Shown here piece by piece: positions 32,814-64,000 of a stretch of DNA of 64,000 bases. Source of the stretch: Camelus ferus (taxonomy: Eukaryota); assembly GCF_009834535.1 (NCBI RefSeq), contig NC_045716.1:19592001-19656000 (forward strand), read 5' to 3'. Numbering within the stretch: position 1 is the first letter of the stretch; each line of letters opens with the position of its first letter. Made by a program: the position numbers and the translations under genes. The notes under the pieces were generated by a model. That model was not told the origin of the DNA and searched no databases. It saw only the letters and a program-made list of their open reading frames with translations.

Positions 32814-32944
32814 NNNNNNNNNNNNNNNNNNNNNNNNNNNNNNNNNNNNNNNNNNNNNNNNNNNNNNNNNNNNNNNNNNNNNNNNNNNNNNNNNNNNNNN
32901 NNNNNNNNNNNNNNNNNNNNNNNNNNNNNNNNNNNNNNNNNNNN
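32814..32944. other. Unresolved bases (131 N) inside L1 RT sequence
   Basis: Seen directly. Confidence 0.99.
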
Positions 32945-41181: not shown

Positions 41182-42150
41182 ATGGAGAGCCCCAATCAAA
41201 CCACTGCTCAGGAGTTTATCTTCTCTGCTTTTCCTTATTCCTGGGGATATTCTGTCATCTGTTTTGTTCCACTGCTCTTCGTTTATACTTTCATTGTTGT
41301 TGGAAACCTGGTCATCATCACAGTGGTCCAGTTGAATATTCACCTCCACACTCCCATGTACTTTTTCATCAGTGCCCTTTCTTTCCTGGAGATCTGGTAT
41401 ACCACAGCTACCATACCAAAGATGCTCTCTTGCCTGCTTGGTGAGAAGAGTATTTCCTTAAATGGTTGTCTCCTGCAGATGTATGTCTTCCATTCCACAG
41501 GCATCAGTGAGGTATGTCTCTTGACAGCTATGGCCTTTGACTGCTACCTGGCCATCTGCAGCCCTCTTCATTATCCCACTATCATGACCCCCAAGCTATG
41601 TGTCCAACTGACTTTAAGTTGCTGTGTTTGTGGCTTTTTCACGCCCCTCCCTGAGATTGCCTGGATTTCCACACTGCCATTTTGCTGCTCTAATCACCTT
41701 GAGCATATCTTTTGTGACTTCCTCCCAGTGCTCCGCCTGGCCTGCACAGACACACACGCCATCGTCATGATTCAGGTGGTGGACGCTGTCCACGCAGTGA
41801 AGATTATGACAGCTGTGGTGCTCATTTTCATGTCCTACTTTGGTATCGTGGCTGTGATTCTACGCATTCGTTCAGCTGAAGGCTGTCGGAAGGCATTTTC
41901 CACGTGTGTTTCCCACCTCACAGTCTTTCTGCTCTTCTTTGGCAGCTTGGCTCTAATGTACCTACGCTTCTCAGCCACCTACTCCTTATTCTGGGATACA
42001 GCCATCGCTCTGGCCTTTGCAGCTTTGTCCCCCTTCTTCAACCCCATTATCTATAGTCTAAGGAATAAAGAGATAAAGGAAGCTATAAAAAAGCACATGG
42101 GGCAAGCTAGTCTTTTTTTGGTAAGACCAGGGTCCTCACGTAAGATCTAA
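41182..42150 (+). CDS. OR6K2: Olfactory receptor 6K2, 322 aa, open frame with atypical MAFDCY motif
   Basis: MESPNQTTAQEFIFSAFPYSW...AIKKHMGQA matches recalled human OR6K2. It is the OR closest to the SPTA1 5' end, as in human. Confidence 0.92.
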   Translation: MESPNQTTAQEFIFSAFPYSWGYSVICFVPLLFVYTFIVVGNLVIITVVQLNIHLHTPMYFFISALSFLEIWYTTATIPKMLSCLLGEKSISLNGCLLQMYVFHSTGISEVCLLTAMAFDCYLAICSPLHYPTIMTPKLCVQLTLSCCVCGFFTPLPEIAWISTLPFCCSNHLEHIFCDFLPVLRLACTDTHAIVMIQVVDAVHAVKIMTAVVLIFMSYFGIVAVILRIRSAEGCRKAFSTCVSHLTVFLLFFGSLALMYLRFSATYSLFWDTAIALAFAALSPFFNPIIYSLRNKEIKEAIKKHMGQASLFLVRPGSSRKI

Positions 42151-46210: not shown

Positions 46211-46254
46211 ATTCCTCACTTCTGGGAAACGTGGAACCATTTCCAAAGGAAGCT
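46211..46254 (+). other. SPTA1: SPTA1 exon 1; ancestral coding part 46231-46254 begins with GTG rather than ATG
   Basis: GTG GAA CCA TTT CCA AAG GAA GCT|gtgagt = VEPFPKEA versus human MEQFPKET. Phase-0 donor and CAG acceptor at 46208-46210. Confidence 0.85.
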
Positions 46255-47469
46255 GTGAGTACAGAATTCTTTACAGTACAGTTGATCACCAATATAATTA
46301 GGCAGGCTGTCTCCTCTGAACTTTCTGTACTATCTTTGACCGAATCAGCAAGAACTGTTCTTGGTTTTTAAGAAGGAGAGATGTTTAATTTTAACTGTCT
46401 TTTTTATCAATGTCTCACTTTAATCGGCAGCCTTGAGGTTGTGGCTGTGCGGCACCAAAATCCAGCAAACACTGACTTATTTGGGTTCGCCTGGAGACCA
46501 GTTGGGTAACGTGGAGCAAAATAACACACACTGAAGATTTAATTCTGTAGCCACAGAATGATTTAATTCTATAGCTGAACCAGTACAGACCATCCACAGA
46601 GTAGCAATTATATACAGGAGAAGAAGACTAAAATTTGAACTGTATATTAAATGTTTTGGATGAGATAAGGTAGGAAAAACTGCGCTTATATCCAGATGAG
46701 TGAAGGTGGACCCAGTGGAAATTTTGCTGGATGTTGTCACAAATAGGTTGGATTCCACTGTATGAAAATAATATTTTGTGTTGTTAGAGAGTATAATGTT
46801 TTACATTGCAAAAGCCGATTACTGAGATGCTAATAATTCGATATTTGTGATAATTGGGTAGCAGATGTGCTGAACTTTTGATTTGTAATGTTTATGAATA
46901 AAGCAAATAAAAGAGTAAACAATATGTTATATTTTTAAGTTAGAAGGAAATCTTTTCAAACTTCTCGGTGTATCATTCATCTAATTAATTGAAAGTGATT
47001 TTTATTTATTCATTAAGTGAAATTCGCCATGCTCGGCACATGTTAATGCCTTTTGGGCCTTTGAAAGCAACACAATTATACATCTTCTTTATCTGTCTGA
47101 AACTCTGTGATTTTATAAATTTCAACTTGTTTTCCATTATTAGTCCAAATTAATTCTGTTTACGGAAATTAATACATGTTGGCACAAATTTATGTGAAAA
47201 GTTGGAAATGTATTTTGAATGACCAAGAATTATTAGCCTAAGCTGTAGCTGCATACGGTTAAATTTTTAGCATATGTGCTGCCGAAGTGAGCACTGTATA
47301 TGGTTAAAATTATATAAATATATTATAGCCTTTCTAACAACAGGCTTTTATAAGCTTAAAGATATGTGAACATAAGTCCAACATGAGTAAGTGCCTTGGG
47401 ACGTGTAAAAGGACAGTGTGCTAGAGATTTGAGAACCTGCATAGATAGAAGCCTTTTAACTTGCAGGCT

Positions 47470-47706
47470 ATGGACAGTGATTGGCCAAAGGTGCTGGAAA
47501 CAGCAGAAGAGATCCAAGAGAGGCGTCAGGAGGTGTTGACTCGGTACCAGAGGTTCAAGGAACAGGTTGCTGAGAGGTCTCAGAAGCTTAAAGACCAGTT
47601 TTACTACAACGTTTTCAGACGGGATGCAGATGACCTGGAGAAATGGATCTTGGAGAAACTCAAGATTGTAGGCGATAAAAGCTATGAAGATTCAGCTAAC
47701 AAACAG
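47470..47706 (+). CDS. SPTA1: Spectrin alpha chain, erythrocytic 1, exon 2 (exon starts 47467; first ATG at 47470)
   Basis: [26 protein letters not shown]...[11 protein letters not shown] covers the alpha0 helix and the start of repeat 1. 240-nt exon, cag acceptor, GT donor. Confidence 0.95.
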
Positions 47707-48780
47707 GTCACTCAACTCCACTGACTTCCCCAGAGTAGACTCTAAGATCTCTAGGGAGGGAAACATTCTAATAATGTAAGTGTACATCTGATTAACCATA
47801 GAAGGATGATGTAACAGAAAGATCAGAATTTAGGGACTGTAATTCTGTCTCTAAATTGCCCATGGCTTCATCTCCCTAAGCCTCAGTATCTTATTTACAA
47901 AGGAAACTCACTCTAGATAACATTCTATAAATGTAACATTGATTTGAAGTCAAGCTATGGGCAAAACTCTGAGAATTCAATGAATTTATGATACACTATG
48001 TGATTTCGATATTCTGTGACATTAAGGATGAAACTGGGGTGAAGAGACATTAACACTTCTGAAATAACTGGTCTTTACTTTCCTCAGAAAGATTTGAGTT
48101 AACCAGCATTTTTCCCAAATGGGTATTCAGGCCTCTTCTTAAGTTCAAATGAGAGGTCTCAGGCAGACAGGGCTGCTGGGAACTCCCACTTCTGCTTGCG
48201 GAAATTATAGTCGTGATCAGAAGAGAGGGTGGCAAGCCCAAAAGGTGCAGTCGATATTGGAGGAGAAGCGCCTGGAGCAAGAACAAAGCATTATTACATG
48301 GATCAGTTTATATAAGACAACAAGAGCATAATCTGGCATAAGAAAACCTCTCAATTAAAAAAAAAAGCCATTATTGTAGTGATCAGCTTCCTTATTGTGC
48401 TCTACTTTCAATAGCACTTGGCTTCTTTCTTCTGAAGAGGAAAAACTCTGTGTTACATGATTTCATTCCCACAGAAGGCAATTTAGACTTTAAAATAATA
48501 TTTACTGGAAATTCCAAAGGCAATGGAAACTGGGAAAAATTTCCTCTTTGGCCCCTGACTTTGAACATGGGACCCTTTGAAAACCTATGTGTGGTAGTCT
48601 GCCAAGACCACTTCTTTTAGGATATGACTTCTCCAGCTATAGTCATAAATTATCACTATCCCCATCTAAGTCGGGAAATAAGTAGTTTTGCCTGAAAGAA
48701 AGAAGAGGAACAAAAGGACCTTCTTATGGTCCAGGGAGACTAGGCTTCGTTAGCCATAAACTCTGATTTCTAAACTTCAG

Positions 48781-48906
48781 GAGGAATATGAGAAGCATAA
48801 ATCCTTCAAAGCAGATGTGCAAGCAAAATCAGAGGTCCTTCCTGAGCTGGGAAATATCTGGAAAGTCCACATTGCTGAGGGGCATTTTGCCCATGAGGAC
48901 ACCAAG
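48781..48906 (+). CDS. SPTA1: SPTA1 exon 3
   Basis: 126 nt, AG/GT bounded; EEYEKHKSFKADVQAKSEVLPELGNIWKVHIAEGHFAHEDTK. Confidence 0.9.
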
Positions 48907-49519
48907 GTAAAAGTATGGTGGGGCTCTGTCAGAGATGGTTCTAAATTGTTGATTATGTTATCAAAGTTTTAATTGGTTATACCAGGTGCAAACCTTGACG
49001 TAACTGGCTTGGAACCATGGTTCTGCCTCTTATCTTCTACTTGGGTTGGGGCAGGAAAAAAGGATGGGATGTTCTAGTGTTCCTTGGAGTAGGGAGAAGG
49101 GCTAGATGATACAAAACTGTCATTAGATAGCACATTCCTCCTTATGTCACTGCAGGATAACTTGGCTCAAGATCAAGCCCACTTCAGCCTAGTTCCACAT
49201 TTCCCATATGAATTGGGTTTCCCAAATGTCCTTTCTAATGAATTCTTCTAACCTCAGGGTCCTTGTTGCTTAAACTCTCTAAACAAAGGATGCTCTTTCT
49301 TTGAATCTTCTCTGAAATCTTTCTCCCTTTGTCTATGAAGCATCTCTCTCTCTTCATAGCCTACATGCTATGACTATTACTGTAGTTCTCCAAACCCTCT
49401 CTTCTGTTCATTTTAGGGGAAAAAAAAAATCTCCCAAAATCCGCTTGTCTTCCCTGAGCCTTGAAGACTGAAGATCACTACCACTATGGAACCATTATTA
49501 ATGTATCAGCTTTTTCTAA

Positions 49520-49662
49520 CTTTTATTTTTTTTATTTTTTTGGTGGGGATAGGTAATTAAGGTTATTTATTTATTTCTAGAGGAGGTACCGGGGATTGAA
49601 CCCAAGACCTTGTGCATGCTAAGCATGCACTCTACTGCTTAAGCTATACCACCCCCTCCCCG
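49520..49662 (-). mobile_element. tRNA-derived SINE, camelid Vic-1 type, in SPTA1 intron 3
   Basis: Same family sequence. Perfect 12-bp target-site duplication AGCTTTTTCTAA at 49508-49519 and 49663-49674. Confidence 0.9.
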
Positions 49663-50703
49663 AGCTTTTTCTAAATTAATTCATATACTCTCCCAACATG
49701 TTTGTGTTGATACAGTCAATTCACATTCCTTTCTGTACAAGCAATTTTTTTTTTTTACTGTTTAAGTATTTTTAAAACTGTCAAGACAAATTTGTGTTAC
49801 ATATTTAAAAATTGGGACTTTCTTTTCATATTTAGTATGCAAATGCTAGCTTGTTTTACTGTCAACAAAACATGGTCAGGGGATACAGAATTTAACCAGA
49901 ATAAACCTTATTAGAAAAAAGACTCTGTAAAAAGAAAATCTCAAAAAACTTATTTATTGTTATAAAATAGAAGTCATACTTGTGTTATTTACAGCTTTGT
50001 GTGCCATCAATCCCTCTACAGTAATTAAAATATTTGAGAAAAGTTCGAAACATCTTTACATCTCTCAGCATCACTGGGGCTATGTCAGACGGTACCACGA
50101 CAGGATTTAGAGAGAAATGTGGTCTGCATCCTCCATGCTACCTTGAGACATGAAGCAGTTGAAAAATACAAGATTCTTGAAGACATAATACAGATGCTAC
50201 CCAATTCTACAATATATATAAAACCTGCTCTTCTAAGTTAACCCTCAACTATATAGTCTCAAAATTCTCTTATTGCTTTGATGCCACTAATTTTCTTTAC
50301 AAGTCAGAAAAATTGCATCTCATCCTTTCTAACAGTCCTCGCTAAGTTTTTGCCAGTGCTTTGAACACCCTCTGCCCATCATCTACCTGTCAGTATTCTG
50401 TCCCTCAGGGCCCAATTCAAATGAGCAGTCTTTCAAGAATCCTTATTCCATATTGTCTTATTATCTGTAATCATTTCATCCTGTAAAATCTGAAAGCATT
50501 ATTAATTTTTTTTTCTCTGGCTTGGTTTAATAGCTGTTCCCATACATACCCTATTTTCTCCTTTCCATATTTGTTGAACAATTAATGCATGAGTGATTGG
50601 GAGGAGGAAATATTACCCAGGTCCATCTCTGCGCAGTTCTCTGGGTCTTCACCTGCTCCACGGCAGGCGTTGTGCCTGAGTGGCTTTGCCTCTCCTCCCA
50701 AAG

Positions 50704-50844
50704 GGCCGTCTGGAAGAGCTGTACGTCCTGTGGGACGAGCTGCTAAGGCTGACCTGGGAGAAGAGCGCTCAGCTGCAGCAAGCCCTGAAGCTTCAGCAGT
50801 ACTCACAGGACTGCGCTGACCTCTTGGAGTGGATCAGAGACAAG
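50704..50844 (+). CDS. SPTA1: SPTA1 exon 4
   Basis: 141 nt, AG/GT bounded; [47 protein letters not shown]. Confidence 0.92.
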
Positions 50845-51617
50845 GTATAGGACAAAACTGTATGCGTATTGGACTTTGCGTCCCTCTGCCCTGGACATCC
50901 CATAGCAGTTTAATGCAGGCCATCCATAAAGAAGTCTGGGTATCTGTTCCTGGGCTTGGTTCCTTGGAAGAAAGAGGAACGTTGGCAAAGATTTAGGGGT
51001 ATTCTGGAGGGTGCTGGGGGATAAGTCTAAATGTATGAATCTCAATATGAAGAAGGTGAGACTTACACAAAAAGTGTGCATTGGAAGATGATCTAGGCTG
51101 GTTCCCCTTCTGCCTTCCATGAGCCTTCACTCTTCCCAGATTTTTGCTCTTACTCTGGGTTCAGGCTGAGAGCACTGCCAGCTCCTTCCCTAATCCAACA
51201 ACTGTGGAGAATTCTATTTTTCTAAATACTTAAAGAATAATCATATGGTTAGGACTGAAAATTTACACAAGCAAGTGCTTAGCACAATGCTTTCGTAAAC
51301 ACTCAGTATGTTGAAATGAGTAGAACCAAGATGGATTTATTTTCTATGCTCCAAAACACAAAAAGATGCCTGCAGAAGCTTTTGCTAACAATGTGTCTGG
51401 TCTCTCTGAAGAATTACCCCGAAGACCATTGTCTCTTGGGCCAGGGTGCTACATCAGGAAATTCAGTCCTGCTTCTGAACCCCTGAAGGGGTTCGCCCAG
51501 GTTCCACCAGTATCTCCTCCTGAGTTATCCTGGGAATGTGAAAAGGTTTGGGGGCATTTGACCTGCGGGGGTTCCTAAACATTTGCTGGTGACTTACTAG
51601 ATTTTCTGTGCCTACAG

Positions 51618-51761
51618 ATTGCTATAGTGACATCAGAGAAGCCAGATAAGGAATGGGAGCACACAGAGGTTCTGCATAAGTTTGAAGAGTTCCAGGTGGA
51701 TCTGGAAGCTAGAAAGAAGAGAGTGGATGGAGTGAACCAGTATGCCAATGAGTGTGCCAAG
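51618..51761 (+). CDS. SPTA1: SPTA1 exon 5 (one codon shorter than human)
   Basis: 144 nt, AG/GT bounded; IAIVTSEKPDKEWEHTEVLHKFEEFQVDLEARKKRVDGVNQYANECAK. Confidence 0.92.
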
Positions 51762-52619
51762 GTGAGGTGGGGAGCAACAGAGCCAGTCCAGGGCAAGCTG
51801 CTCTGATCTTCAAGAAGAACATCTAGCCGTTAGTAGGTGGGACGGGAAAAAGATAGGACCTTGCCAGAAAACAGAGGTGTGCCTGTGCCTGGAATAACAT
51901 TCCCAGAGAAGTTTCTTCTTTCTGAATTTATCCCTTGCCACTCCATGGAAATGGAGGTGTGCGTGAGTGTGTCTGTGTGTGTATGTGTGTATGCAAAGGA
52001 ATTAAGTCCACAATGAGATTATTCTTGCACTGTGCAGTACCTGGAGTTCTCAAGTTTCTGAAGCACTCTTTCTTCATGAGGAAGAACCTGAATAAAGTAG
52101 CAAAGAATATAAAATAATGGTGAGCTTTCATAATACACATGAAATCATTAAACTGAATCTTTCCACGTGTGGGGGAAGGGAAAAAGAGGCAGATTTACCT
52201 TCACTTACTTACAAAAATGCTTGAATAAGTGTTTAATATCTGAGCAGATAAGCGCTCATTGTGTGAATAAACAATCCCTAGCATATGTAAGAACTGGGAA
52301 GTCAGTCTGATTTTATATGCACATGAAGGAACTAGAAACTCCAACAGTTGGCTATTAGAATTTCCATTTAAGGGTTCATTATCACTGCAGCTCTATAATG
52401 GGAATGATATTTCTGTGTTAACAGAACCAAGATTTCAGGATGAATGGATCCTAGAGTAGGGAAAAATAACTTATTTCTCAATTTTTTTCCAGGACACATT
52501 TCCACCAGTCCCTAAATTCTTTCCCTCTACCATCTTTTTCTCATTGTGGAGATTTTTCAGTTATCTCTTACCACCTACCAAACTACCACAAAAATTAAGA
52601 CAACAGATGTCTTGTGTTT

Positions 52620-52960
52620 TTCATGATTCAGTGAGTTAGATTCACTGATTCATGATTTAGTGATTCAGCTGCTCACCTGGGCTGTTCTCCTGACCCTACC
52701 TGGTATTCTTAAGTGGCTGCAGTTATCCGGTGGCTCAGTTGGGGTGGAAGATCTAGAATGACTTTGCCCCCACGTCCGGGGTTTTGGCAAAGACAATGAA
52801 GGCTTCCTCCGTACGATCTCTCATCTTTCAGTCAATCATGCTTTCTTATGTGTTACTATTCCAAGAAGGTAAGAGCAGAAGCTGAAAGGCCTTTCGGGGC
52901 CTGGGTACTGGAGCTCAGAGAATATCATTTCTACTCATAAGCAAGGAAGGAGAAGTGGAC
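52620..52960. mobile_element. MaLR (MLT1-type) LTR fragment in SPTA1 intron 5
   Basis: ccaagaaggtaagagcagaagctgaaaggcc...ggagctcagagaatatcatttctactc; recognised from memory. Confidence 0.45.
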
Positions 52961-53613
52961 AATTTTGTCTGAACAGGCTTCAAAATGGGAATAAACAGGG
53001 GATGGGGGGATTAGGGAGACATGGGCTTTGGGGAACTACTCAGAATTGCCAAGTATCAAAATGGGCTGGTGCTGCTAGCTTAATCTAATATTTGTAAACT
53101 TCATTGCTTTGGACAGTTAGAAAAATTGTATGAAATTTTCTGCAAAATTAAATTTATCTGTGTGTATGTATAATTCTGGGAAGAGGGAAATAGCTCTCAT
53201 AAGAATATCGAAAGTGTCAGGACCCCCAAAGTGCTAAGAATCACACTATTGAAGTTTTGAAGAATGTAGCCATATTTTGCAAAGGGAATTTCCTCTCCTT
53301 TTCCTTGGTTTCCGGGATTTCTCAAGGGTATTGAGCAGGCGTCAACGTGGTGGAGTTCTGAACATAACGTGTTTGGGCAACCTGTGTTCATAGGCTAGTC
53401 CATTGCTGTGGGTAAAAGATAGACTATCTGGCAGGTTTTTTTCCCCCTAGATTTGGGTAATGTGGATCAAGTAAGAGTCAGGGAGCAGAGCTAAGTGAAG
53501 TGTAGTATCTGGCTAAGTGGCTGTTCTCCACTTCTGGGAAAATATGAACCAGTATGAAACAAGAAATGTTTAAATGATTTTTGCCGAAGTCCAGCACTGG
53601 TTTCCTCCCACAG

Positions 53614-53747
53614 GAAAAGCATCCTGAGCTGCCCTCAATTCAGTCAAAGCAGAATGAAGTGAATACAGCCTGGGAGCATCTCCAGAGTCTGGTTCTCCAG
53701 CGACAGGAAACACTGTCCAGGGCTGCAGACCTCTACCGATTCAAAAG
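53614..53747 (+). CDS. SPTA1: SPTA1 exon 6
   Basis: 134 nt, AG/GT bounded; [44 protein letters not shown](R). Confidence 0.93.
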
Positions 53748-54297
53748 GTAGGAGTCTGCCCACTGAATTACAGGAAACTCCGCAGTAGCACCATGTTTGT
53801 TATTTGTGTTAGCCTCTGCCTGCCCTTAGCAGTTAGTGACCAGTACCTCAAACCAAAGAAAATCATGTGCTCACCTTAGAGACAACAAGGGAGAGAGTAG
53901 TTATGAGAATTGTGACCCACTCCCTAGCCAAGTTTGTGTCCAATGTCACGTAAGGCAATAAAAATGGCACCGGTGAGTTAGCGAAGGAAGCTCTGCAGGG
54001 GCGAGGAAAGCAGATTAAGAACTGGAAGAGGGAGGAAGGTGATGCTGAGAGGGACGTTCGTAAGAGCTGACTCCAATGTGAGAAGTGTATCTGGAGGCTC
54101 AGTTGTCAGGATGCCCAGGTCTCTACATCTCAATGAAAATCGTTCAAAGCAAGAACTCTTTACTTTACTTTCTCGCTAGAGCGTGGGATGGTAGGGTAAC
54201 TGCTGGCTGGGCGAACTAGGGTGGTCTTTGCTGTGTGCTCTTTGCCCTGGAATACCCGCCTTCTTCCTTCGTTGGAGTTCATGTGGATGTCTGGCAG

Positions 54298-54442
54298 GGA
54301 TGTGACCGAAATCATCCAGTGGATTACGGAGAAGGAGCCTCAGCTCACCTCTGAGGATTATGGCGAAAACCTTGCTAGCTCTGAGGCGCTGTTGCACAGT
54401 CACAAAGGGCTTGAGGGGAACCTTAAAGGCATGCATGACAAG
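54298..54442 (+). CDS. SPTA1: SPTA1 exon 7
   Basis: 145 nt, AG/GT bounded; [48 protein letters not shown]. Confidence 0.93.
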
Positions 54443-54839
54443 GTAAGCCTGTTGAAGCAACGGCTAACCTCTTGAGCTAGAAGAGTCATTTGGTGTTCAA
54501 ATTCTGTGGCCCTTGAATATATCTCCCCTTATAACTTGTATGTGAATATTGATATCCCTTAATTTTACCTAAATTGTTTTAATTTAAATATATGTATATG
54601 TTTTATGTAGCCTCATGCTTTTTGTAATATATTAAAAAAAAAAAAGATAGCTTCAAGAATGGTTTCCTAATCTTACTCAGTAGCCTGTGGCCAGAGAGTC
54701 TTTTCATTTATCTAACCATGCTTTCTGCTGTTGTGGCTGAATCTTTCTTTTCTTTTTGCTCTTTATGTATTTATTGCAAGTCTTGTTCAAAGGAGAGGTT
54801 GAAACAGTAACTTCTTATTCAATCTTTTTTTCTATTTAA

Positions 54840-55420
54840 TAATTTTTTGAAACAATAAAAATTTACAAAAAAAAAAGTGGAAAGATGCTACAAAGAATGG
54901 TGTGCGGATACATGTTCAACAGTTGGTTCTCCAGGGCAAAAAAGGTCTGAATTGTAACATTTGTTAATTTCTGTGGTATAAATACTCCCATCACAGTCAA
55001 TTTCAAGATGTTACTGAATGCAGAGTTGGACAGATATAAGCACAATGAACTCCGTCACACCACTCACAGCTTTTTTTCCTGAACCATTTGAGAATAAATT
55101 GCCAGTCTGATGCACCACCCTCAAATACTAAGTATGTATTTCCCATAAATGCAGACATGTCCTCATATAACCACATTAAAACCATAAAAGTCAGGAAATG
55201 AACATCTAATCCAGAGACCCCATGCAAATTTCACCAACTGTCCCAACAGTGACGTTTGTACCAAAAAAGATCCAATTCAGAATCACAAGTTGCATTTAGA
55301 TATCAAGTCTCTTTAGACTCCTTAAACCTGGAAAAGTTCCTCAGTTTTTCCTTGATTTTAATGATCTTGACATTTTTAAAGATTACAGGCCATTTATTTT
55401 TTAGAATATCCTTTGGTATG
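54840..55420 (-). mobile_element. Old L1M 3' fragment (antisense) in SPTA1 intron 7, possibly with a nested element
   Basis: tcaccaactgtcccaaca...ttgcatttag...gttcctcagtttttccttg...ttacaggcc resembles an L1M 3'UTR; recognised from memory. Confidence 0.5.
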
Positions 55421-56129
55421 GATTTGACTGATTGAGTCTTGTTTCTTTTTGTCCTTCACTCAGTAGAAAAGGAAAGACTTTTCTTCTTTCCCCTTTTTAA
55501 TAAACTCAGACACTTAAAGCACATTATTAAACCCACCTTTGAGTTTTCTTCTGGGAGCTGGAAAATCGCAGTTTCTATCCCTATGGTAGACATAGGCATA
55601 CTAGAACTTTGAGCAAGCCTGTGTTTTTGAACGACTCCCGCCCTTACTTCTTCCCCTCACAACTTGACCCATAACTTAAACCAGTCACTCCTGCATATGC
55701 AGCGGAGTCAGCCCACAGGGAGATTCCCACTTGCTCGGCTGTAATCATCACTCTGCCCCTGTGTCAACTTTCTGAAAACTGCCTCACCATTCTGCTTCTT
55801 TTGTTCTTGCTTATTTTTTGCCCTTGGTCTTTTTTTTTTTTTCCCTAATAATGAATAATAAAATATCATGATTTGATGAATAATGATAATAAAATGTCAA
55901 ATCCTAGATAATATCTAATTATAGTTGAGTACGACTGAAAGACTAACAACAGCATGTGGAATTTGCCCCAGGAACCCCACTCCTCAGGAATTGTGCTCAG
56001 AATGATCTGGCATTACTGGAGTTGTCCTGGCAGAAATTTTCCTGAGCAGAAATGTCTTTCTGATTCCCACAACCATATTTATGGAAATAGTATAGAGCGT
56101 AATGAAGGACAGGTGATGTCTAAACCTGG

Positions 56130-56320
56130 CTTCTGACCATGTCTAGCTGAGTGACCTTGAGCAAATAAAACATTCTACCTCTCAGTTTTCTCATAAAAGG
56201 GGAATGAGAATAGTTTCTGCCTCCTAGTAATATTAAAAGAAGAGTATAAAACAAGAAAATTCGTGTGACATGCTTAGCACAATGAGAGACAAAAAGTGGT
56301 CAGTAATTATTGTTAATATT
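56130..56320 (+). mobile_element. MIR SINE in SPTA1 intron 7
   Basis: ctagctgagtgaccttgagcaaa...cctctcagttttctcataaaagggga...atgcttagcacaat. Confidence 0.65.
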
Positions 56321-56605
56321 GTTACATGAATATGTTAATATAAATAGATCAACATAAATGCACTAATAAATTATTCTTATTCACATGATTATTTTGTTAC
56401 ATCGCTCCCATAAAACTTTGTTGGGAAGACCAGAGTGGGCCTGGATTTCCCACTAGGTTTTTTTTTTTTTCTTTTTTCTTCTTAAATTATAGAAATTGCC
56501 GGTGTACAGCATTATAATTAGACATCTGTGCATACAACAAAGTTGCCACTCGTCACCAGCCAGTTAACCCACCTTCATCCACTAGGTTTCTTTTTCATCC
56601 CAAAG

Positions 56606-56760
56606 GTGGAGAAGTTACGTGAGAAAGCAGACAGCCTGAAGCTTTCCCATCCTTCAGATGCAGCTCAGATCCAGCAGATAAAAGAGGATCTGGTCTCCAA
56701 CTGGGAGCACTTCTGCACCTTGGCTGCCAGCAGATATGAAAAGCTACAGGCTTCTTATCG
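56606..56760 (+). CDS. SPTA1: SPTA1 exon 8
   Basis: 155 nt, AG/GT bounded; [51 protein letters not shown](R). Confidence 0.93.
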
Positions 56761-57272
56761 GTGAGAAACCCTTCTTCTCTCTTGCTTTATCGCTCTCTAT
56801 GGGATTCAGGAATAATATCGAAAGCAGAGGTAAGAGGGAAAGGAGTAAGATAATGAGTGAGCCGGCCCTCCTCCCTGCTCAGCAGAGGCAAGAGAAGTTT
56901 TAATTTGCCAGCAGAAGTCCTTTGCAGGCTGATATAACACTCAGCATGACGCCGTCTTTCGCCTGTACTGTTTCTGTCTTCCTCTATTTGTATAGTTGTA
57001 GGAAGCTACGAAGTGGCCCACAGAGCTGAAAAGTAGCTGAAGAAACATGTCAAAATCCTGGCCCTGGCTAAGGAACTGGAATTAGTTTCCAAGTTGAAGT
57101 GCATAAAATAAATCTAGAATTATTTCCTGAATGTAGGTTAGCTTACAAAAAGGACTTGAGCATCAATTCCGCAATTGATTTTTCTGATATTCAATCACCA
57201 GAAAATAGTATTTACCTTCTTGTTATGATTTAAAATCAAATGGTGAGCTTCTAATTTTTTCAAATAGGTAAC

Positions 57273-57277
<5 letters not shown>

Positions 57278-57314
<37 letters not shown>
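57278..57314. repeat. (TG)n microsatellite in SPTA1 intron 8
   Basis: About 18 uninterrupted TG units. Confidence 0.95.
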
Positions 57315-57317
<3 letters not shown>

Positions 57318-57736
57318 GTTTGTTTGTTTTTTTACTGCTGTGGTTAAGGGTGAGCTAATATACACAAGCTCTCCTAACCCTAACGCTAGTCGCTCCTTCT
57401 CACAAGGTGTCTCCTGTTCTTCATGTTGTGTGCTTCTTTATTGGCTTCCTTGGGAGTACTTTACTCCACTTGGGGCAGGTCTGACTTTGTGATTTTGGAG
57501 AGGTAATGCCCAAGTGCCTTATCCCACAATGACACATCTACCCTGGGAGTATTCAACCTGGCGTGAAGGACTCACAGCCTGCAGCCCTAAAGGAACAGGA
57601 AGCACATCAGAGGAAGGGGAGGTGGAGGGTTAGAGCTAGAAGCATGTTGCACATCTTAGCCCAACCCAAGCTCTTTGTTCAAAGTCCATTTGCACCTGGT
57701 TTCTCCTTCTAGCCTTTTCCCTTATCTTTTCCACAG

Positions 57737-57872
57737 GTACCAGCGGTTCTTATCCGACTATGATGAGCTCTTACGCTGGATGAAGGAGAAGATTGCTCTG
57801 ATCAGTGCCGATGAGCTGCCCATAGATGTCACGGGTGCAGAAGCCCTGCTGGACAAGCACCAGCAACATAAG
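57737..57872 (+). CDS. SPTA1: SPTA1 exon 9
   Basis: 136 nt, AG/GT bounded; [45 protein letters not shown]. Confidence 0.93.
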
Positions 57873-57953
57873 GTTAGAGAGGGACGAGGGAGGTGCCAAG
57901 ACTGCCACAAAGTTTCTAGCTGCACTTTAAGACATTTTGTCTTGTGGCCACAG

Positions 57954-58055
57954 AATAACATTGACTCTTACCATAACCGACGTCAGTTGGTTGATGAGAC
58001 TGGAAAAGCCCTGCTGGATGCCCATCATGAAGCCTCTGATGAAATTCGGGAAAAG
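57954..58055 (+). CDS. SPTA1: SPTA1 exon 10
   Basis: 102 nt, AG/GT bounded; [34 protein letters not shown]. Confidence 0.92.
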
Positions 58056-59495
58056 GTAATCTCGTTTAACAGTCTGTGAAATTTCTCTATTTATTTAGCC
58101 TTCACTTAATCTCATACTAATATGATCATCTCTGAATGGGAAGAGGATAGAAGGCTTATTAACATCTTAATATGGGCCCAAATTTCACACTGCTTCCTTC
58201 ACATGTTGCTTTAGCAGAACTGAGCCAATTGAAAAACCATTCTTCACCGCTGAGACTTTACTTCACCAACCTAATTTCATCAACCTACCTTCTCCCTAAT
58301 TTGAAACCTGCATCCCATCTTGCCTTGTCGCATGTGCTCTGTTGTATCCCTTTCACACGCTCATCCCCAGGTTGTGAATTCTTTGAGGACTGTAGCCATC
58401 TTGGATTCTTTAAGGTACCTAGCATGGTGCCTAACATATGGCTATCTTTCTTCTCTCTTCTATACTGCCTCAAATCAAACTGATTTTCCTATATCTGTTT
58501 CTCCATCTATATTAAACAACAGGAGAGCTTTAAACACTCAGAATTACACTGAATGAAGAAGCAGGTTTGACATCGTCCTAACCGCTTGGATCCCAGGGGC
58601 TCACTTCAACCCCCTGACCCCTGAGAAATTTTGCTTCAGTCACAGACACCACAGACAGGAATTCGTTGGAATGGTAACTGAAATAAGATTTGCAGGCTCT
58701 TTGCATCTCATTAGATTCCAAGCACAGTCCCCAGTGCTATATGGCGAAGGTTGAGATGACCATATTTTGAATTTGCCAAAAACTCTATGGGAACATTATA
58801 ATATGGATTTTTATTTTTAACAATTTTATGCCAAAAGAATAGCAGGACCCAAATCCTTGGAAGCTTACCTATTATCCTGGGATGCTGATAATTTGTGCTT
58901 TTTTGGATAAAGTTAACACAGCAACTGTTTTGATAAGCTGGAGTTTCTTGGGCAAATTCTTGGGCAGAAACAAAGGTTTTTAAGTTTCAGAATGTCACTT
59001 TTCTCTTTCCTCATCTGCTTTTGGAGTAGAGTGCAAACTTCTCAATCTGATAATTTAAGTGCTCTATGAACTTGAATTTCATGAAACGTCTACCATTTTC
59101 AGACACCGCCCTTTTCTCCGGAGCACGTTGCATGATCTAATGATTACTTGGAGGAATTACTTGCTTGTGAAGTTATGTCCTCCTACAATCTTGATTCCTC
59201 ACTGCCCTGCTCTTTGAATCTCTGTTTGATACAATACTTTCCACACTTCTACTCCCTGGTTCATCAAATCAGAATTAATCTTTTCTTCTTTATTTATACA
59301 TATCAAGTGTGTTGTACTTCTGTTACAGTATTTATCTCGTTTGACCTATACTACAGTTACTCACTTAGATGATAGAGCCTTAGGAGAAAAGCCTGTTGCC
59401 TATTCATTTTTGGATCCTTCAAGAGGCTTTGCATGTATTAGATGCTCAGTAAATGTAGGATAAAATAAATGAAGTATCTTCCGGTACATTCTTTC

Positions 59496-59875
59496 TCTTT
59501 TTAGAATTGAAGTATAGCTGATTTACAATATTGTGTTGCTTTCTGCTGCAGAACATAGTGATTCAGTTACATATACATATATACATATATTGTTTTTCAT
59601 TATAGGTTATTATAAGCTATTGAATATAGTGCTATACAGTAGGACCTTGTTGTTTGCAGATTTTATATATAGTAGTTTGTGTCTGCTAATCCCAAACTCC
59701 CAGTTTAGCCCTCTCCACCTTTCCCCCTTTCCCCTTTGGTAGCCATAAGTTTGTTTTCTACATCTGTGAGTCTCTTTCTGTTTTGTAAATAAGTTCACTT
59801 GTGTCATTGTTTTTAGATTCCACTTATAAGTGGTATCATACCATTTGTGTCTTTGTCTGACTTACATCACTTAGT
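59496..59875 (-). mobile_element. 5'-truncated L1 3' end (antisense) in SPTA1 intron 10, abutting the exon 11 acceptor
   Basis: tttttagaattgaagtatagctgatttacaat...tctgacttacatcacttagt. Flanking duplication cYggtacatt.t.tc at 59481-59495 and 59876-59890. Confidence 0.85.
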
Positions 59876-59903
59876 CTGGTACATTATCTCCTCCTTTCAA
59901 AAG

Positions 59904-60041
59904 ATGGCAACACTCGACCACACCTGGTCCACCCTGCTGGAACTGTGGGACAGGCGTCAGAATCAGTACGAGCAGTGCTTGGAGCTGCACATCTTCTACC
60001 GTGACAGTGAGCAAGTGGACAGCTGGATGAGTAGACAGGAG
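59904..60041 (+). CDS. SPTA1: SPTA1 exon 11
   Basis: 138 nt, AG/GT bounded; [46 protein letters not shown]. Confidence 0.93.
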
Positions 60042-60645
60042 GTAACAAGGGGTGGGGGGCTCAGCAAGTGTCTGGAAGCCACTTGTCCCACTCCTCATTT
60101 ACTACTGTCAGCACCTTCACAACCCCTTCTGTTCACCTGGGAATGGAGGGTGAGCCTCAAGAAGGAGAAAAGATTGGCACTGTCTATGAGGCTCTTGCAA
60201 TTCCCTCATGGACAAATGCACAGAAAAATACCTGAATACAAAGCAGAGAAGTTTGAAGCCCAAATGAACATGAGACAAAAATGAATATCCAATTGTCAAG
60301 GGGTCAGGAAGAGAAAATGGGATGAGTGAGGCAGGGTTAACCAGAGATTTCCTGGAGGAGATGAGTGAGTGGTCCTCTTGAGGCAGCTTTGTGATCTCAG
60401 AATAGTGTCTAGATGGGCTGGGACAGACACAGAGACAAAGGTGATGAAGTTGTGTAGAGGATTGGGAAGGGAGTCTGGAGCTCCTGCTGTTTAAGTTAGT
60501 CTCTACCCCCTCTCCTCCTCTGTGCTAATTCCCACCTTGCCTCCATCCCCTCACCTCCTTCCTCACTCCTTTCTCAGAAGTATTCCAAAGGGAATGTTTC
60601 TTACCAATGAGGCACAGCTAAGATGTAGCTTTCTGTCTACTATAG

Positions 60646-60756
60646 GCCTTCCTGAAAAATGAGGACCTGGGAGACTCCCTGGGCAGCGTAAAAGCCCTTC
60701 TTCAGAGCCACGGTGACTTTGAGGAAGCCTTTACCGCCCAGGAGGAGAAGATCACA
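60646..60756 (+). CDS. SPTA1: SPTA1 exon 12
   Basis: 111 nt, AG/GT bounded; [37 protein letters not shown]. Confidence 0.93.
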
Positions 60757-62055
60757 GTAAGCAATGGGCCCTGGTTCGGGCTCAGGCTTCATGTTTGTGT
60801 ATATCATCCCATACAACGCCAATCTTCAAAACCACTCATAACTGTCAGACGGAATATGAAGGTTGTTCTTAAAAGAGAAAATACCCAGAAAAATAATCAT
60901 ACCCATTTTTATCAACACATTTCTCACCCTGCAAAGCAAATTTAGAAAGTTTTTAAAGATTTCAAGTCATTTATATTTCTGATGAAGTGCACGATTGTCT
61001 TCTTTTTTCTGCAGTATAAGGAGAGACGATTGGATCCATGTCCAACATAGAATCATCACTTAAAAGTTTGAAATGTATTATTTACTTTTTGAGTTTTTCT
61101 CCTCTCCAGTAATATCGCCCTTTAGTTTTCTGGATTCGTATCTAGATATCTAAGTAGTATCTATTTCTCCCTGTGTCTTTTCATCTATGTGTTTCTCATT
61201 TAATGCTACTATGGTTTTTCTATGAACTTTAAGTTACAATGTCACAGAAACTGGTCAGTATATAAGCAAGAAGTATGAGGACTGGACTTTATTTGCCCAA
61301 TATATTGTATATCCTTGGCCATCTCCTAGGATGGGGCTGGTTTTAAATGCACACACGTGTATTTATACCACAACCACCACCACCACCAACAGTAACAACA
61401 AAATTCCAAGTCTTCTCTGTTAATCTTCAGTCAGTATGGCACGTAATATGGTCCCTTACAAATCCATATGCTTATTCTGTTGGTTCTCATTGGTAAAATC
61501 TAACAGCATGAAGTAAATTAGGATTTGTAAAAGGCTATCATTTATTTCAGGTCATTTTCCTATTCTCAATCAATTAATCCATCCTGGGCTCTAGCGATTT
61601 TGGGAGTTCATGAATGAATTATGAGTAAAAATTCACATCTGTGATTTCTCACTTCATTCCTCATGTAGTTAGAGATTAGATGTAGATATAAGTTTATATG
61701 ACAGACTATGGATGGATAGATAGATAGACAAATAGAGCCTGGACATGGCTATATCAATAGTAATTCCTCTTAAAAATTAAAGAATAGGTCAGATATTCAC
61801 TTGGTAGTGACATCAGCATTCGCTGACTGTAACCTAGATTTATAAAACATTGTGGCATAGAGAGGGTAATTAACTTGCCTGAAATATACATTTTGAAATG
61901 TAATTTATAAAATAAATCAGAAGTGGGACCTAGGTCTGACTTTGGAACTTGTCTTTTCCCCACATTGTCATGTTTCCTCTTTAAACTAGTCAAACTGTGG
62001 CCACTTACTCATGACCACTGAGGGGAAAGCACTCCTTTTTTTTTTTTTTCCCCAG

Positions 62056-62133
62056 ACCTTAGACAAGACTGCAACCAAACTGATTGACAACAACCACTAT
62101 GATTCAGAGAACATCGCTGCTATCCGGGATAAG
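62056..62133 (+). CDS. SPTA1: SPTA1 exon 13
   Basis: 78 nt, AG/GT bounded; TLDKTATKLIDNNHYDSENIAAIRDK. Confidence 0.93.
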
Positions 62134-62279
62134 GTATTTTCAAGGTCCCAGATGTGCCTCCACCTGCCTGTGCACTGGGGTCAGGGGAGGTGTTGGAGCG
62201 TGATGACTGTGGTGGGCGGTGAATCTCATGTATCCATGTTTGATTTTGCTGACAGTGAGTCTGTGTATGGTTTTTGCAG

Positions 62280-62438
62280 CTGTTGGCCCGACAGCGTGCT
62301 TTACGTGAAAGGGCTGCCACTCGACGCAAGTTGCTGGAAAATTCATTGCTTCTGCAGAAACTGTTTCGGGACATAGATGACCTAAAGAACTGGATCAACA
62401 AGAAGAAAAAACTGGCAGATGATGATAAAGATTGCAAG
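62280..62438 (+). CDS. SPTA1: SPTA1 exon 14 (one codon longer than human)
   Basis: 159 nt, AG/GT bounded; [53 protein letters not shown]. Confidence 0.93.
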
Positions 62439-63803
62439 GTAGGCAGGATTTGCAGACCCTGGACACACCCTTTGGGACTGAATTTCATGGAATTAGAGTC
62501 TTGGAACTGGAAGGACAGTGACGTTCAGCTGGCAAACCTCACTTTGTAGATGAGAAGACAGAGTCTCAGAGCAGGGCAATGACTCCTCCAGGACTATATA
62601 TCTAGCGAAGAATCTAGTTTCCAGTTTTCCTGTACCCTGTTGCCCATCACCCCTTTTCTCTGGCACAATTTCCAGTGGTCCTGAACAGAATGGGGGAAAG
62701 GAGGAACTGCTCCTTATTTAGTTGCTTATGCCCCCTTCTGCTTCCCTCTCCACCCTTAACAGTAGGAAAATATTGGGTCTAATCATAATGTACATTCAAG
62801 CTATTTGGAACTCAAAAGTAATCCAAGGTTTTGGTATAACGTAGACTGACACAGTTTTGTAGCTGGAGAGGAACACGTTTTTATTTTATAGATGGGGAAA
62901 CCAGGGATCTGAACTGTGAAGTGAGTTGCCCAAGGTCGGCCAAGTATTTAGGAAGCAGGTTAACCTAAGGGTTAGAAGCATGAATTCTTTCTGGAGAAGG
63001 TAAAAACTGGGCTTAAATTCTCTCCCTGTCCTGTTTTAGTTTGTGTGACGTTGAAAAATTCCAGAATTATCTCTGAGCCATAGGTTTCTTTGCCTTGGGG
63101 TTGTGTAAAACACGTATCTTTCACTCACAAAATAAACTATGATACATGCACACACACCTACAGACTCACAAATTTTCACATTTACAGTCAGGGCTAGAAT
63201 TAGTCTCTTGATTTCTAGGCCAATATCTATTCCCAGTACTCACCTTTCTAGACATAATTTAGTCTTAAATGTATACCTCTGATCCTTTTGTTCTTACGTT
63301 TTTATAGAACTTTGAGCATCTTACCAATGCCTTTCACTCTGTAAAACTCAGCATTACATGCTTGTGTTGTCTAGAGGAGTTATGGTTCCAGTGTATGTAG
63401 GGTAAACAGATCTTCTCTATATGGGGCAGAAGGATGGATGCTTCGTATACTAGGATAGGAATGAAAGGTAATCTTCATCCTTTATGACAGCTCTGATTGG
63501 TTATTAATGCTTGCATGGAGTGTCATATTTTAAATGATCTTCCGACCATACCCAGACTCAGTAGAAACAAATTCAGGGATTGATTAGCCATGTCTGCCAC
63601 TTGTGTGGAAGGAGGGATTGGTTGCATAGTCTCCTAAACATCCTCTGGCTCTATGCTTGGACTAGGACAGTCCTCCCTTACATCCTCTTCGCAGTTCAGT
63701 TAGATTTGTGGTGAAAAGAAATCCTCGTCCTCAAAATGTACGCCCCTTTATTCGTCAAGTAATGGTTTGTTTTGTTTTGTTCTGTTTTTCCATTTTGTCT
63801 CAG

Positions 63804-64000
63804 GATATACAGACCTTGAGGATCCAGGTTCAAAAGCAGCAAGTCTTTGAAGAGGAATTGGTAGCTAAGAAGATCCTGCTCAATGATCTAAAGAAAACTG
63901 GTCAGGAGATGATTGAGAGCAATCACTATGCCTCTGAAAGTGCGGCTGCTCGTCTGAGGGAGGTTGACAGACTCTGGAAGGAGTTGCTGGAGGCTACAGA
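63804..64000 (+). CDS. SPTA1: SPTA1 exon 15 (truncated by window end)
   Basis: cag acceptor ends at 63803; [65 protein letters not shown]. Confidence 0.93.

What the first reader, a model, noticed from the sequence alone, without database searches (positions are those of the whole stretch)
47521..47610. Camelid alpha-spectrin has substitutions at elliptocytosis positions in the tetramerisation site (R41Q, G46S) and a rewritten alpha0-alpha1 linker
Seen: exon 2 encodes ...[34 protein letters not shown], with Q at human position 41 (47563-65) and S at position 46 (47578-80). The linker reads KDQFYYN where human has EDSYHLQ and mouse EESYHYQ (recalled). Established: the alpha0 helix pairs with beta-spectrin repeat 17 to form tetramers, and missense changes at R28, R34, R41 (Tunis), R45, G46 (Culoz), K48 and L49 cause human hereditary elliptocytosis. 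R28, R34, R45, K48 and L49 are retained here. Camelids have naturally elliptical, poorly deformable red cells, and the SINEs place this DNA in Camelidae. Inference: the lineage may have fixed a retuned tetramer interface, possibly with compensating SPTB changes, that contributes to the ellipsoidal red cell.
Basis: partly seen in the sequence, partly recalled or inferred. Interest (0 to 1): 0.85.

Follow-up and report, generated by a model that had tools for sequence, protein, structure and literature searches.

The report
Camelid alpha-spectrin tetramer-site junction rewritten
Camels and llamas share an altered hinge next to the site where red-cell alpha-spectrin joins head to head; it is real and conserved within camelids, but it belongs to an already published gene-wide burst of change and no link to their oval red cells has been shown.

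Summary
The sequence is as reported. Window 47467-47706 (+) is an intact SPTA1 exon 2 of an Old World camel, with Q41, S46 and the linker KDQFYYN.

The "R41Q" part fails. Across 89 other mammalian sequences, position 41 is L (57), R (29), Q (pig) or M, so L is the majority state.

The rest holds. G46, S52 and Y53 are invariant in all 89, and Q56 in 88. Camelids alone carry S46, K50, Q52, F53 and N56. These residues are identical in Camelus and in a locus 4.3% diverged in DNA, which I take to be the llama tribe. The core interface residues are unchanged.

This is not a local oddity:
- Camelids carry 92 private changes at conserved SPTA1 sites, against 8-11 in pig, ruminants and whales.
- Stem dN/dS is 0.59 against 0.30 on other artiodactyl branches, then 0.21 within camelids.
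- Codons 1-160 show no amino-acid change since the two tribes split.

Ebel et al. 2017 already named the Camelidae stem as the top SPTA1 branch and suggested a link to cell shape. Chen et al. 2023 explain the ellipsoid cells through protein 4.1R.

The direction of any affinity change is unknown, and I could not obtain camelid SPTB. The scan's two neighbouring notes on this window agree with these results.

The parts
46231..46254 (+). SPTA1 exon 1 coding-equivalent: GTG GAA CCA TTT CCA AAG GAA GCT (VEPFPKEA), followed by the donor gtgagt. GTG stands where other mammals have the ATG start.
   Evidence: It aligns with MEQFPKET of human and afrotherian proteins.
47467..47706 (+). SPTA1 exon 2 (80 codons, human residues 9-88). 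It encodes the alpha0 helix, the junction and the start of repeat 1. The annotated camelid start ATG is at 47470-47472.
   Evidence: AG/GT splice sites are present. The Pfam Spectrin repeat is matched. P0266 matches all window exons 667/667.
47503..47577 (+). alpha0 helix C' (human residues 21-45), which packs against beta-spectrin repeat 17. I24, R28, V31, R34 and R45 are unchanged.
   Evidence: The helix limits are from the 1OWA literature (recalled) and are reproduced by the bear AF2 model, helix 12-36 = human 21-45.
47563..47565 (+). Codon 41, CAG = Q. This position is variable in mammals (L 57, R 29, Q 2 pig sequences, M 1).
47578..47580 (+). Codon 46, TCT = S. It is GGT = G in every other taxon examined, so two nucleotide changes separate them.
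   Evidence: G in 89/89 non-camelid sequences.
47578..47610 (+). Junction and linker, codons 46-56: [11 protein letters not shown] against the consensus GQKLE[DE]SY[HY]YQ. There are 11 nucleotide differences in 33 nt from the codons shared by Cervus, Bubalus and Ursus, including TCC->CAG at codon 52 and CAG->AAC at codon 56.
   Evidence: The segment is identical in Camelus (L002, window) and in the diverged camelid locus L001.
48778..63998 (+). Further SPTA1 coding exons (residues ~88-676, repeats 1-6) at about 48778-48903, 50701-50844, 51618-51761, 53614-53745, 54296-54439, 56603-56758, 57735-57872, 57954-58052, 59901-60041, 60646-60756, 62056-62133, 62280-62438 and 63804-63998. The gene runs off the window.
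   Evidence: (exact 7-mer mapping of P0251, so block ends are approximate where a codon is split by an intron).

Best explanation
This is exon 2 of the erythroid alpha-spectrin gene (SPTA1) of an Old World camel. It is intact and correctly spliced.

Shown:
- The alpha0 helix keeps every core contact residue.
- The 7-11 residues that join it to repeat 1 (the 'junction', 46-56) carry five replacements found in no other mammal examined: G46S, E50K, S52Q, Y53F and Q56N.
- Several of these need two or three nucleotide changes.
- All are identical in both camelid groups, so they predate the crown group and have been held unchanged since.
- They are one of the densest patches in a gene-wide burst of replacements on the camelid stem. 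The dN/dS ratio there is about double the artiodactyl background, and it is followed by a return to strong purifying selection.

Inferred: the junction is the segment that goes from disordered to helical when beta-spectrin binds. Residue 46 is a known in-vitro tuning point for tetramer affinity. So the camelid version most likely shifts the dimer-tetramer equilibrium, or the stiffness of the hinge at the tetramer midpoint. If so, it would be one component of a remodelled membrane skeleton, alongside 4.1R exon 14 and abundant band 3.

The direction of the shift and any contribution to the elliptical shape are not established. Q41 is not part of the story.
For: - Identity and integrity.
- Private and invariant sites: G46, S52 and Y53 are 89/89, Q56 is 88/89 and E50 is 84/89 in other mammals.
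- Fixation: ten camelid proteins fall into two groups that share the segment. L001 is 95.7% identical in DNA to the window, which I read as the other tribe. The codons are identical in both.
- Gene-wide burst: 92 camelid-private changes at >=95% conserved columns, against 8-11 in pig, ruminants, whales and hippo.
- Rates: stem dN 0.077, dS 0.130, omega 0.59 [0.48-0.72]. Other artiodactyl branches give 0.30 [0.27-0.34] and the camelid tip branches 0.21 [0.14-0.29]. For codons 1-160 the stem omega is 1.20 [0.61-3.1], with zero replacements on the tip branches.
- Protein tree: the camelid stem is 0.21 substitutions per site, twice the whole pig branch.
- Hot-spot rank: 46-56 is the second densest 11-codon window for camelid-private nucleotide changes, and 5 of the top 7 windows lie in residues 46-188.
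- No intragenic donor for a conversion event.
- Literature: PMC5634635 text and its S11 table list Camelidae as the top branch. PMC8456306 shows that tetramer affinity sets deformability. PMC9926112 shows that the ellipsoid shape resides in the Triton shell, which contains spectrin.
- Weak hint: single-sequence AF2 breaks the bear helix exactly at 46-52 but runs the camel helix straight through.
Against: - The 46-56 cluster is not significant as a gene-wide maximum: permutation P=0.31 for nucleotides and P=0.44 for 4 hits in 11 residues.
- The N domain (1-55) is not enriched for adaptive codons mammal-wide.
- Stem omega is below 1 gene-wide and not significantly above 1 in the N-terminus.
- As I recall Kang et al. 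2010 (not held here), G46A binds like wild type, so a small side chain at 46 may be nearly neutral.
- The camel AF2 model has low confidence (pLDDT 53), so that contrast carries little weight.
- High-affinity alphaII knock-in mice keep discocytes, so an affinity change alone does not give ellipses.
- A separate, tested explanation exists: the 4.1R e14 cassette.
- No binding data and no camelid SPTB sequence were obtained.
Confidence: 0.55

Rival explanations
1. One reading: the camelid junction acts like a mild hereditary-elliptocytosis allele. It weakens alpha0-beta17 binding, so that shear remodels the skeleton permanently into an ellipse, with compensating changes elsewhere preventing fragmentation.
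For: Codon 46 is the site of the human elliptocytosis allele Spectrin Culoz (cited). G46 is invariant elsewhere. Alpaca cells become elliptical only as reticulocytes mature in the circulation, and the shape is held by the skeleton. [quoted passage not shown]
Against: S is not the disease residue V. Q41 is shared with pig, and L41 is the majority state. All core contact residues are kept. Camelid membranes are hyperstable and poorly deformable, not fragile. By my own sum on the recalled Pace-Scholtz scale, the junction's helix propensity rises to the alphaII level, which points towards tighter rather than weaker binding.
Confidence: 0.15
2. Near-neutral passengers: the junction changes have little effect on tetramerisation. 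They accumulated during a period of relaxed or shifted constraint on the whole of SPTA1, for example once 4.1R exon 14 and extra band 3 had made the skeleton rigid, and were then frozen in place.
For: Replacements are spread over all repeats. The junction cluster is not significant after gene-wide permutation. Stem omega is 0.59, below 1. G46A is near wild type in vitro (recalled). Other elliptocytosis codons also vary naturally: Q34 in 10 sequences (the murid rodents and Dipodomys) and K45 in 4 phyllostomid bat sequences.
Against: G46, S52 and Y53 are invariant over about 180 My of mammalian history, and the junction QKLEDS is shared with alphaII. Three codons needed 2-3 nucleotide changes each. 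Camelids show zero replacements in 147 N-terminal codons since the tribes split, so the derived state is under constraint.
Confidence: 0.3
3. Parasite-driven change: the N-terminal changes were selected by a red-cell parasite (a piroplasm or haemosporidian) that used alpha-spectrin repeat 0-1. Any effect on cell mechanics would be a by-product.
For: Ebel et al. find SPTA1 among the most adaptive Plasmodium-interacting proteins, with repeat 1 enriched for adaptive codons. Human variants in the first SPTA1 domains impair P. falciparum growth.
Against: The burst is confined to the stem and then stops (tip-branch omega 0.21, N-terminus 0), unlike a continuing arms race. The authors themselves set the camel signal apart and relate it to cell shape. 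No camelid parasite is known to bind this segment.
Confidence: 0.1
4. Artefact: an assembly or annotation error, or a decaying gene copy.
For: None found.
Against: The same codons occur in three independent sources: the window, L002 and L001. The gene has 51 coding blocks, a 2408-2411 aa open frame and, at every boundary that does not split a codon, canonical splice sites. Purifying selection acts within camelids. Spectrin protein is present in alpaca ghosts.
Confidence: 0.01

Closest known systems
Human hereditary elliptocytosis alleles Spectrin Culoz (G46V) and Spectrin Tunis (R41W)
   Same: Same gene, same exon and same codons (46 and 41), next to or in the alpha0 helix that forms the tetramer contact.
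   Different: Different residues (S rather than V, Q rather than W). Position 41 is naturally L, R, Q or M in healthy mammals. The camelid state is fixed and conserved, not a rare allele. No binding defect has been shown.
alphaII-spectrin (SPTAN1) junction and the engineered alphaI variants G46A/R/E (Kang, Song, Sevinc, Fung 2010; cited; content recalled)
   Same: The Gly at the head of the junction is lost. The junction is the segment thought to set the roughly 10-fold affinity difference between alphaI and alphaII.
   Different: alphaII has R there and keeps QKLEDS. Camelids have S and also change E50, S52, Y53 and Q56, positions that alphaI and alphaII otherwise share. No affinity has been measured.
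alphaII R0-R1 knock-in mouse (Hale et al. 2021, PMC8456306)
   Same: It alters the same exons (2-4). It shows that tetramer-site affinity controls deformability, thermostability and tumbling versus tank-treading, traits that resemble camelid cells.
   Different: It is an engineered paralogue swap, and the cells remain biconcave discs. The camelid changes are natural, fewer, and of unknown sign.
Camelidae-stem adaptive burst in SPTA1 (Ebel et al. 2017, PMC5634635)
   Same: Same gene and same branch. That study lists 99 adaptive codons (MEME p<=0.01) on the Camelidae stem, the top of the 85-species tree, and suggests a link to the unusual red-cell shape. My rate estimates agree.
   Different: That paper does not single out codon 46 or the junction, and its N domain (1-55) was not enriched mammal-wide.
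Camelid protein 4.1R with the exon-14 cassette (Chen et al. 2023, PMC9926112)
   Same: A camelid-specific change in a membrane-skeleton protein, offered as the cause of rigid ellipsoid cells.
   Different: It is a different protein and a different site (the junctional complex, not the tetramer midpoint). It has biochemical support from viscometry and SPR, whereas the spectrin junction has none.

Membership tests
SPTA1 (erythroid alpha-spectrin) orthologue | An N-terminal partial repeat (alpha0 helix C') followed by spectrin repeat 1 | tested here: met
   phmmer against PDB: pig SPTA1 8iah_8 1.8e-72, human 1owa 6.6e-32, 3lbx_A 7.2e-32. Pfam Spectrin repeat is matched.
SPTA1 (erythroid alpha-spectrin) orthologue | Closer to alphaI than to alphaII, and located in the SPTA1 genomic neighbourhood | tested here: met
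   alphaII 3f31 scores lower, 2.7e-23. Window exons match camelid proteins that cluster with 'spectrin alpha 1-like [Camelus ferus]'. Four olfactory-receptor genes lie upstream. That this matches the human SPTA1 locus is from memory.
SPTA1 (erythroid alpha-spectrin) orthologue | Intact full-length reading frame with working splice sites | tested here: met
   51 coding blocks, 2408-2411 aa, in L001 and L002. Boundaries are canonical except where a codon is split by the intron. Exon 2 has AG/GT.
SPTA1 (erythroid alpha-spectrin) orthologue | Expressed as the alpha chain of the red-cell skeleton | not testable with these tools
   Spectrin is immunodetected in alpaca ghosts and Triton shells (PMC9926112), but the isoform was not sequenced there.
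Hereditary-elliptocytosis-type tetramer-site variant | The same amino-acid replacement as a disease allele | tested here: not met
   Camelids have Q41 and S46. The disease alleles are W41 and V46 (named in the reference list; the residues are established knowledge).
Hereditary-elliptocytosis-type tetramer-site variant | The replaced residue is otherwise conserved in mammals | tested here: inconclusive
   Met for 46 (G 89/89). Not met for 41 (L 57, R 29, Q 2, M 1).
Hereditary-elliptocytosis-type tetramer-site variant | Reduced alpha0-beta17 binding or an excess of spectrin dimers | not testable with these tools
   No binding data for camelid spectrin were found in the library.
Lineage-specific episodic (adaptive) evolution | dN/dS raised on the focal branch relative to the background | tested here: met
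   Stem 0.59 [0.48-0.72] against 0.30 [0.27-0.34]. No bootstrap replicate had stem <= background.
Lineage-specific episodic (adaptive) evolution | dN/dS above 1 at the sites in question | tested here: inconclusive
   Codons 1-160 give a stem omega of 1.20 with a 95% interval of 0.61-3.1. No site-level branch-site test was possible. MEME results are published only as counts per branch.
Lineage-specific episodic (adaptive) evolution | The derived state is conserved afterwards | tested here: met
   Camelid tip-branch omega is 0.21. There are no replacements in 147 N-terminal codons in either tribe, and the codons are identical.
Co-evolved alpha0/beta17 interface | Matching camelid-specific changes in SPTB repeat 17 | not tested
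   Two searches for camelid SPTB returned fish SPTB, SPTBN1 isoforms and a few mammalian fragments, but no camelid sequence.

The most novel reading that the evidence does not exclude
Camelids have re-tuned the alpha0-repeat 1 junction of erythroid alpha-spectrin (S46, K50, Q52, F53, N56), a segment otherwise frozen across mammals and shared with alphaII. The re-tuning would change the make-and-break kinetics or the hinge stiffness of the spectrin tetramer. Together with 4.1R exon 14, this would be needed for the rigid, permanently ellipsoid red cell. It would be a natural exception to the claim that mammalian alphaI tetramer affinity sits at a single optimum.
Probability: 0.2. Interest if true: 0.65.

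Novelty: new variant of a known kind. Interest (0 to 1): 0.45.

Why it matters
Hale et al. 2021 argue that mammalian red cells tolerate neither higher nor lower spectrin tetramer affinity. They also state that the alphaI interface has been conserved since the human-platypus ancestor.

Camelids are the only mammals with elliptical, barely deformable red cells. They are also the only ones in this sample that have rewritten the junction flanking that interface, including G46, a known elliptocytosis codon and in-vitro affinity switch. This turns a general published remark ("many adaptive SPTA1 codons at the base of Camelidae") into a five-residue hypothesis. It can be tested with two recombinant peptides and a calorimeter.

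If the junction proves neutral, that is also useful. It would show how much the segment can vary without disease, which helps in interpreting human SPTA1 variants at codons 34, 41, 45 and 46.

Tried and rejected
1. SPTB co-substitution. I spent the two remaining protein searches on a fish SPTB query and a lungfish SPTB query, using a length-restricted part. No camelid SPTB was recovered, so the test was not done.

Instead I fitted pairwise Nei-Gojobori dN and dS to a fixed 8-taxon tree by non-negative least squares. I also counted camelid-private differences at columns that are invariant in the other taxa.

3. The bootstrap for exon 2 alone failed because of saturated small samples.

4. Gene conversion from another spectrin repeat as the source of the 11-nt cluster: blastn-short of the segment against the window, L001 and L002 found only chance 11-16 nt matches. 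Rejected.

5. Local clustering as evidence in itself: gene-wide permutations are not significant, so I do not claim it.

6. AF2 single-sequence models of camel and bear residues 1-150. The bear model reproduces the known break at 46-52 and the camel model is one continuous helix. The camel model is poor (pLDDT 53, pTM 0.27), so I treat this as a hint only.

7. The key biochemical papers are not held in the library: Gaetani 2008, Ipsaro 2010, Kang 2010, Long 2007 and Morle 1990. What I say about them is recalled and marked as such.

8. Literature searches for camelid spectrin dimer-tetramer data found nothing.

Full report
**What is there.** Window 47467-47706 (+) is a clean exon. It has the acceptor cttgcag|GCT and the donor CAG|gtcact, with 80 in-frame codons. 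Its translation matches the N-terminus of erythroid alpha-spectrin in solved structures: pig 8iah_8 at E=1.8e-72 for the whole chain, and human 1owa and 3lbx_A at about 7e-32. AlphaII-spectrin (3f31) scores lower, at 2.7e-23. The linker reads KDQFYYN. The recalled comparators are also right: human EDSYHLQ and mouse EESYHYQ.

The window carries coding exons for residues up to about 676 and then runs off the end. One stored camelid protein (P0266) matches all 667 window-encoded residues, and the named Camelus ferus protein differs at one. The DNA is therefore from an Old World camel.

**Comparison across mammals.** A search seeded with a deer SPTA1 N-terminus returned named SPTA1 proteins from about 80 species, monotreme to human. 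I aligned the first 115 residues and counted residues in 89 non-camelid sequences.

| Position | Other mammals | Camelids |
|---|---|---|
| 41 | L 57, R 29, Q 2 (both pig), M 1 | Q |
| 46 | G 89/89 | S |
| 50 | E 84, Q 4, D 1 | K |
| 52 | S 89/89 | Q |
| 53 | Y 89/89 | F |
| 54 | H 67, Y 17, others 5 | Y |
| 55 | Y 84 (L only in anthropoids) | Y |
| 56 | Q 88, R 1 | N |

L41 is also the residue in alphaII-spectrin and in echidna and marsupials. So "R41Q" is a comparison with a derived human state, not a camelid hit on a conserved site. Pig, which has round cells, has the same Q. H54Y and Y55 are not camelid novelties. I24, R28, V31, R34, R45, K48 and L49 are unchanged.

**Fixation.** The 90% cluster of the window's protein holds ten full-length camelid sequences. 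They fall into two groups about 50 residues apart, and all have the same alpha0 and linker. The genomic locus of one protein from the minority group (L001) is 95.7% identical to window 46970-64000. That is far more divergence than the few amino-acid differences within the Camelus group would suggest. Codons 36-60 are identical in the two groups apart from one synonymous difference at codon 37.

**Nucleotide detail.** Codon by codon:
- 46: GGT to TCT (two changes)
- 50: GAA to AAA
- 51: GAT to GAC (silent)
- 52: TCC to CAG (three changes)
- 53: TAT to TTT
- 54: CAC to TAC
- 56: CAG to AAC (two changes)

That makes 11 differences in 33 nt, while the flanking codons are almost untouched. Against the stem's synonymous rate of 0.13 this is an excess (binomial P about 0.002), but the window was chosen after looking. 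I found no donor elsewhere in the gene that could have supplied the segment by conversion.

**The local cluster is part of a gene-wide event.** On a 66-sequence full-length alignment, camelids share 92 private replacements at columns that are at least 95% conserved elsewhere. The comparable counts are 8 in pig, 11 in ruminants, 8 in whales, 11 in hippo, 1 in perissodactyls and 68 in echidna. The replacements occur in nearly every repeat, with modest excesses in repeats 1, 3 and 21. Four hits in 11 residues occurs at five places, and a permutation gives P=0.44 for such a maximum.

At the nucleotide level, 46-56 is the second densest 11-codon window in the gene. Only 1174-1184 is denser. Five of the seven densest windows lie between residues 46 and 188, yet the gene-wide permutation is again not significant (P=0.31). 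On a protein tree the camelid stem is 0.21 substitutions per site, twice the entire pig branch.

**Selection.** I fetched the SPTA1 loci of eight species, mapped every codon, and masked split codons. I then fitted Nei-Gojobori dN and dS to the accepted tree.

| Region | Camelid stem omega | Other artiodactyl branches | Camelid tip branches |
|---|---|---|---|
| Whole gene | 0.59 [0.48-0.72] | 0.30 [0.27-0.34] | 0.21 [0.14-0.29] |
| Codons 1-160 | 1.20 [0.61-3.1] | 0.44 | 0 (no replacement in either tribe) |

The pattern is a burst followed by renewed constraint. That argues against simple decay, but it does not by itself prove positive selection.

**What is already published.** Ebel et al. 2017 (PMC5634635) ran MEME on 85 mammals. 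They list the base of Camelidae as the top branch, with 99 adaptive codons (20 in the enriched domains). They state that the high density in camels may relate to the unusual red-cell shape. Their N domain (1-55) was not enriched mammal-wide.

Chen et al. 2023 (PMC9926112) show that camelid 4.1R includes exon 14 and forms a hyperstable spectrin-actin-4.1R complex. The ellipsoid shape persists in the Triton shell, and cells become elliptical as reticulocytes mature. They did not examine the spectrin sequence.

Hale et al. 2021 (PMC8456306) replaced mouse exons 2-4 with the alphaII versions. The resulting cells had high-affinity tetramers, were less deformable and tumbled under shear, but remained discocytes. 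The authors state that the alphaI interface has been conserved since the human-platypus ancestor. The camelid data agree for the core contacts and add an exception at the junction.

**Likely mechanism (inferred).** The junction 46-52 (GQKLEDS) is disordered in free alphaI and helical in alphaII (RQKLEDS). As I recall the Fung laboratory's work (Kang et al. 2010, cited but not held), G46R raises affinity about 10-fold, G46E lowers it about 16-fold and G46A is neutral.

The camelid SQKLKDQ changes three of these seven residues. On the Pace-Scholtz helix-propensity scale (recalled values, my own sum) the penalties are:
- alphaI consensus: 3.45 kcal/mol
- camelid: 2.70 kcal/mol
- alphaII: 2.66 kcal/mol

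In single-sequence AF2 models, the bear helix breaks exactly at 46-52, as in the NMR structure, whereas the camel helix is continuous. The camel model is of low confidence.

These hints favour a stiffer, more alphaII-like junction and tighter or slower-exchanging tetramers, which would fit the rigid camelid cell. The G46A result and the discoid knock-in mouse warn that the effect may be small and cannot alone give an ellipse.

**Verdict.** At the gene level this is known. At the site level it is a new and easily tested variant of a well-studied interface.

Noticed in passing
window 46231-46254: The SPTA1 exon 1 equivalent reads GTG GAA CCA TTT CCA AAG GAA GCT|gtgagt (VEPFPKEA), with GTG where other mammals have the ATG start. 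Annotated camelid proteins start at the exon 2 ATG (47470). Many laurasiatherian entries also start at that Met, and a mink entry begins VKHFPKETA, so the loss may be older than camelids.
   Followed up: partly
window 5325-6278, 14864-15802, 35335-36327, 41134-42150 (all +): Four intact olfactory-receptor genes (Pfam 7tm_4, E 1e-51 to 1e-63) lie upstream of SPTA1. A fifth open frame at 25470-26465 overlaps a run of N and was not examined.
   Followed up: partly
window 25950-26097, 32000-32167, 32169-32309, 32814-32944: Four runs of N, left as they are.
   Followed up: no
L002 (Camelus SPTA1 locus), residues about 1174-1184 in human-like numbering: This is the densest patch of camelid-private nucleotide changes in the whole gene (10 in 11 codons: L1178E, S1181K, A1182N, H1183R). 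Like 46-56, it sits at a junction between two spectrin repeats (11 and 12).
   Followed up: no
L002, residues about 2184-2238 (repeat 21): Ten camelid-private replacements at conserved sites, mostly charge changes (G2184R, G2191E, A2199E, K2201I, K2205E, Q2208E, M2210R, K2216T, G2221R, G2238E). This is in the region that, from memory, nucleates alpha-beta dimer assembly.
   Followed up: no
P0238 (Manis javanica SPTA1): The pangolin has the longest terminal branch among the therian mammals in the protein tree (0.25 substitutions per site) and 53 private changes at conserved sites. I did not separate real acceleration from annotation error.
   Followed up: no
alignment, positions 34 and 45: Other human elliptocytosis codons vary naturally in healthy species: Q34 in 10 sequences (the murid rodents and the kangaroo rats, Dipodomys) and K45 in 4 phyllostomid bat sequences. 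This may help in judging human variants at these codons.
   Followed up: partly
window 47707-47724: Read-through of the exon 2 donor gives VTQLH and then a stop. A 95-aa database entry from another mammal (P0006) is the same kind of intron read-through artefact.
   Followed up: no
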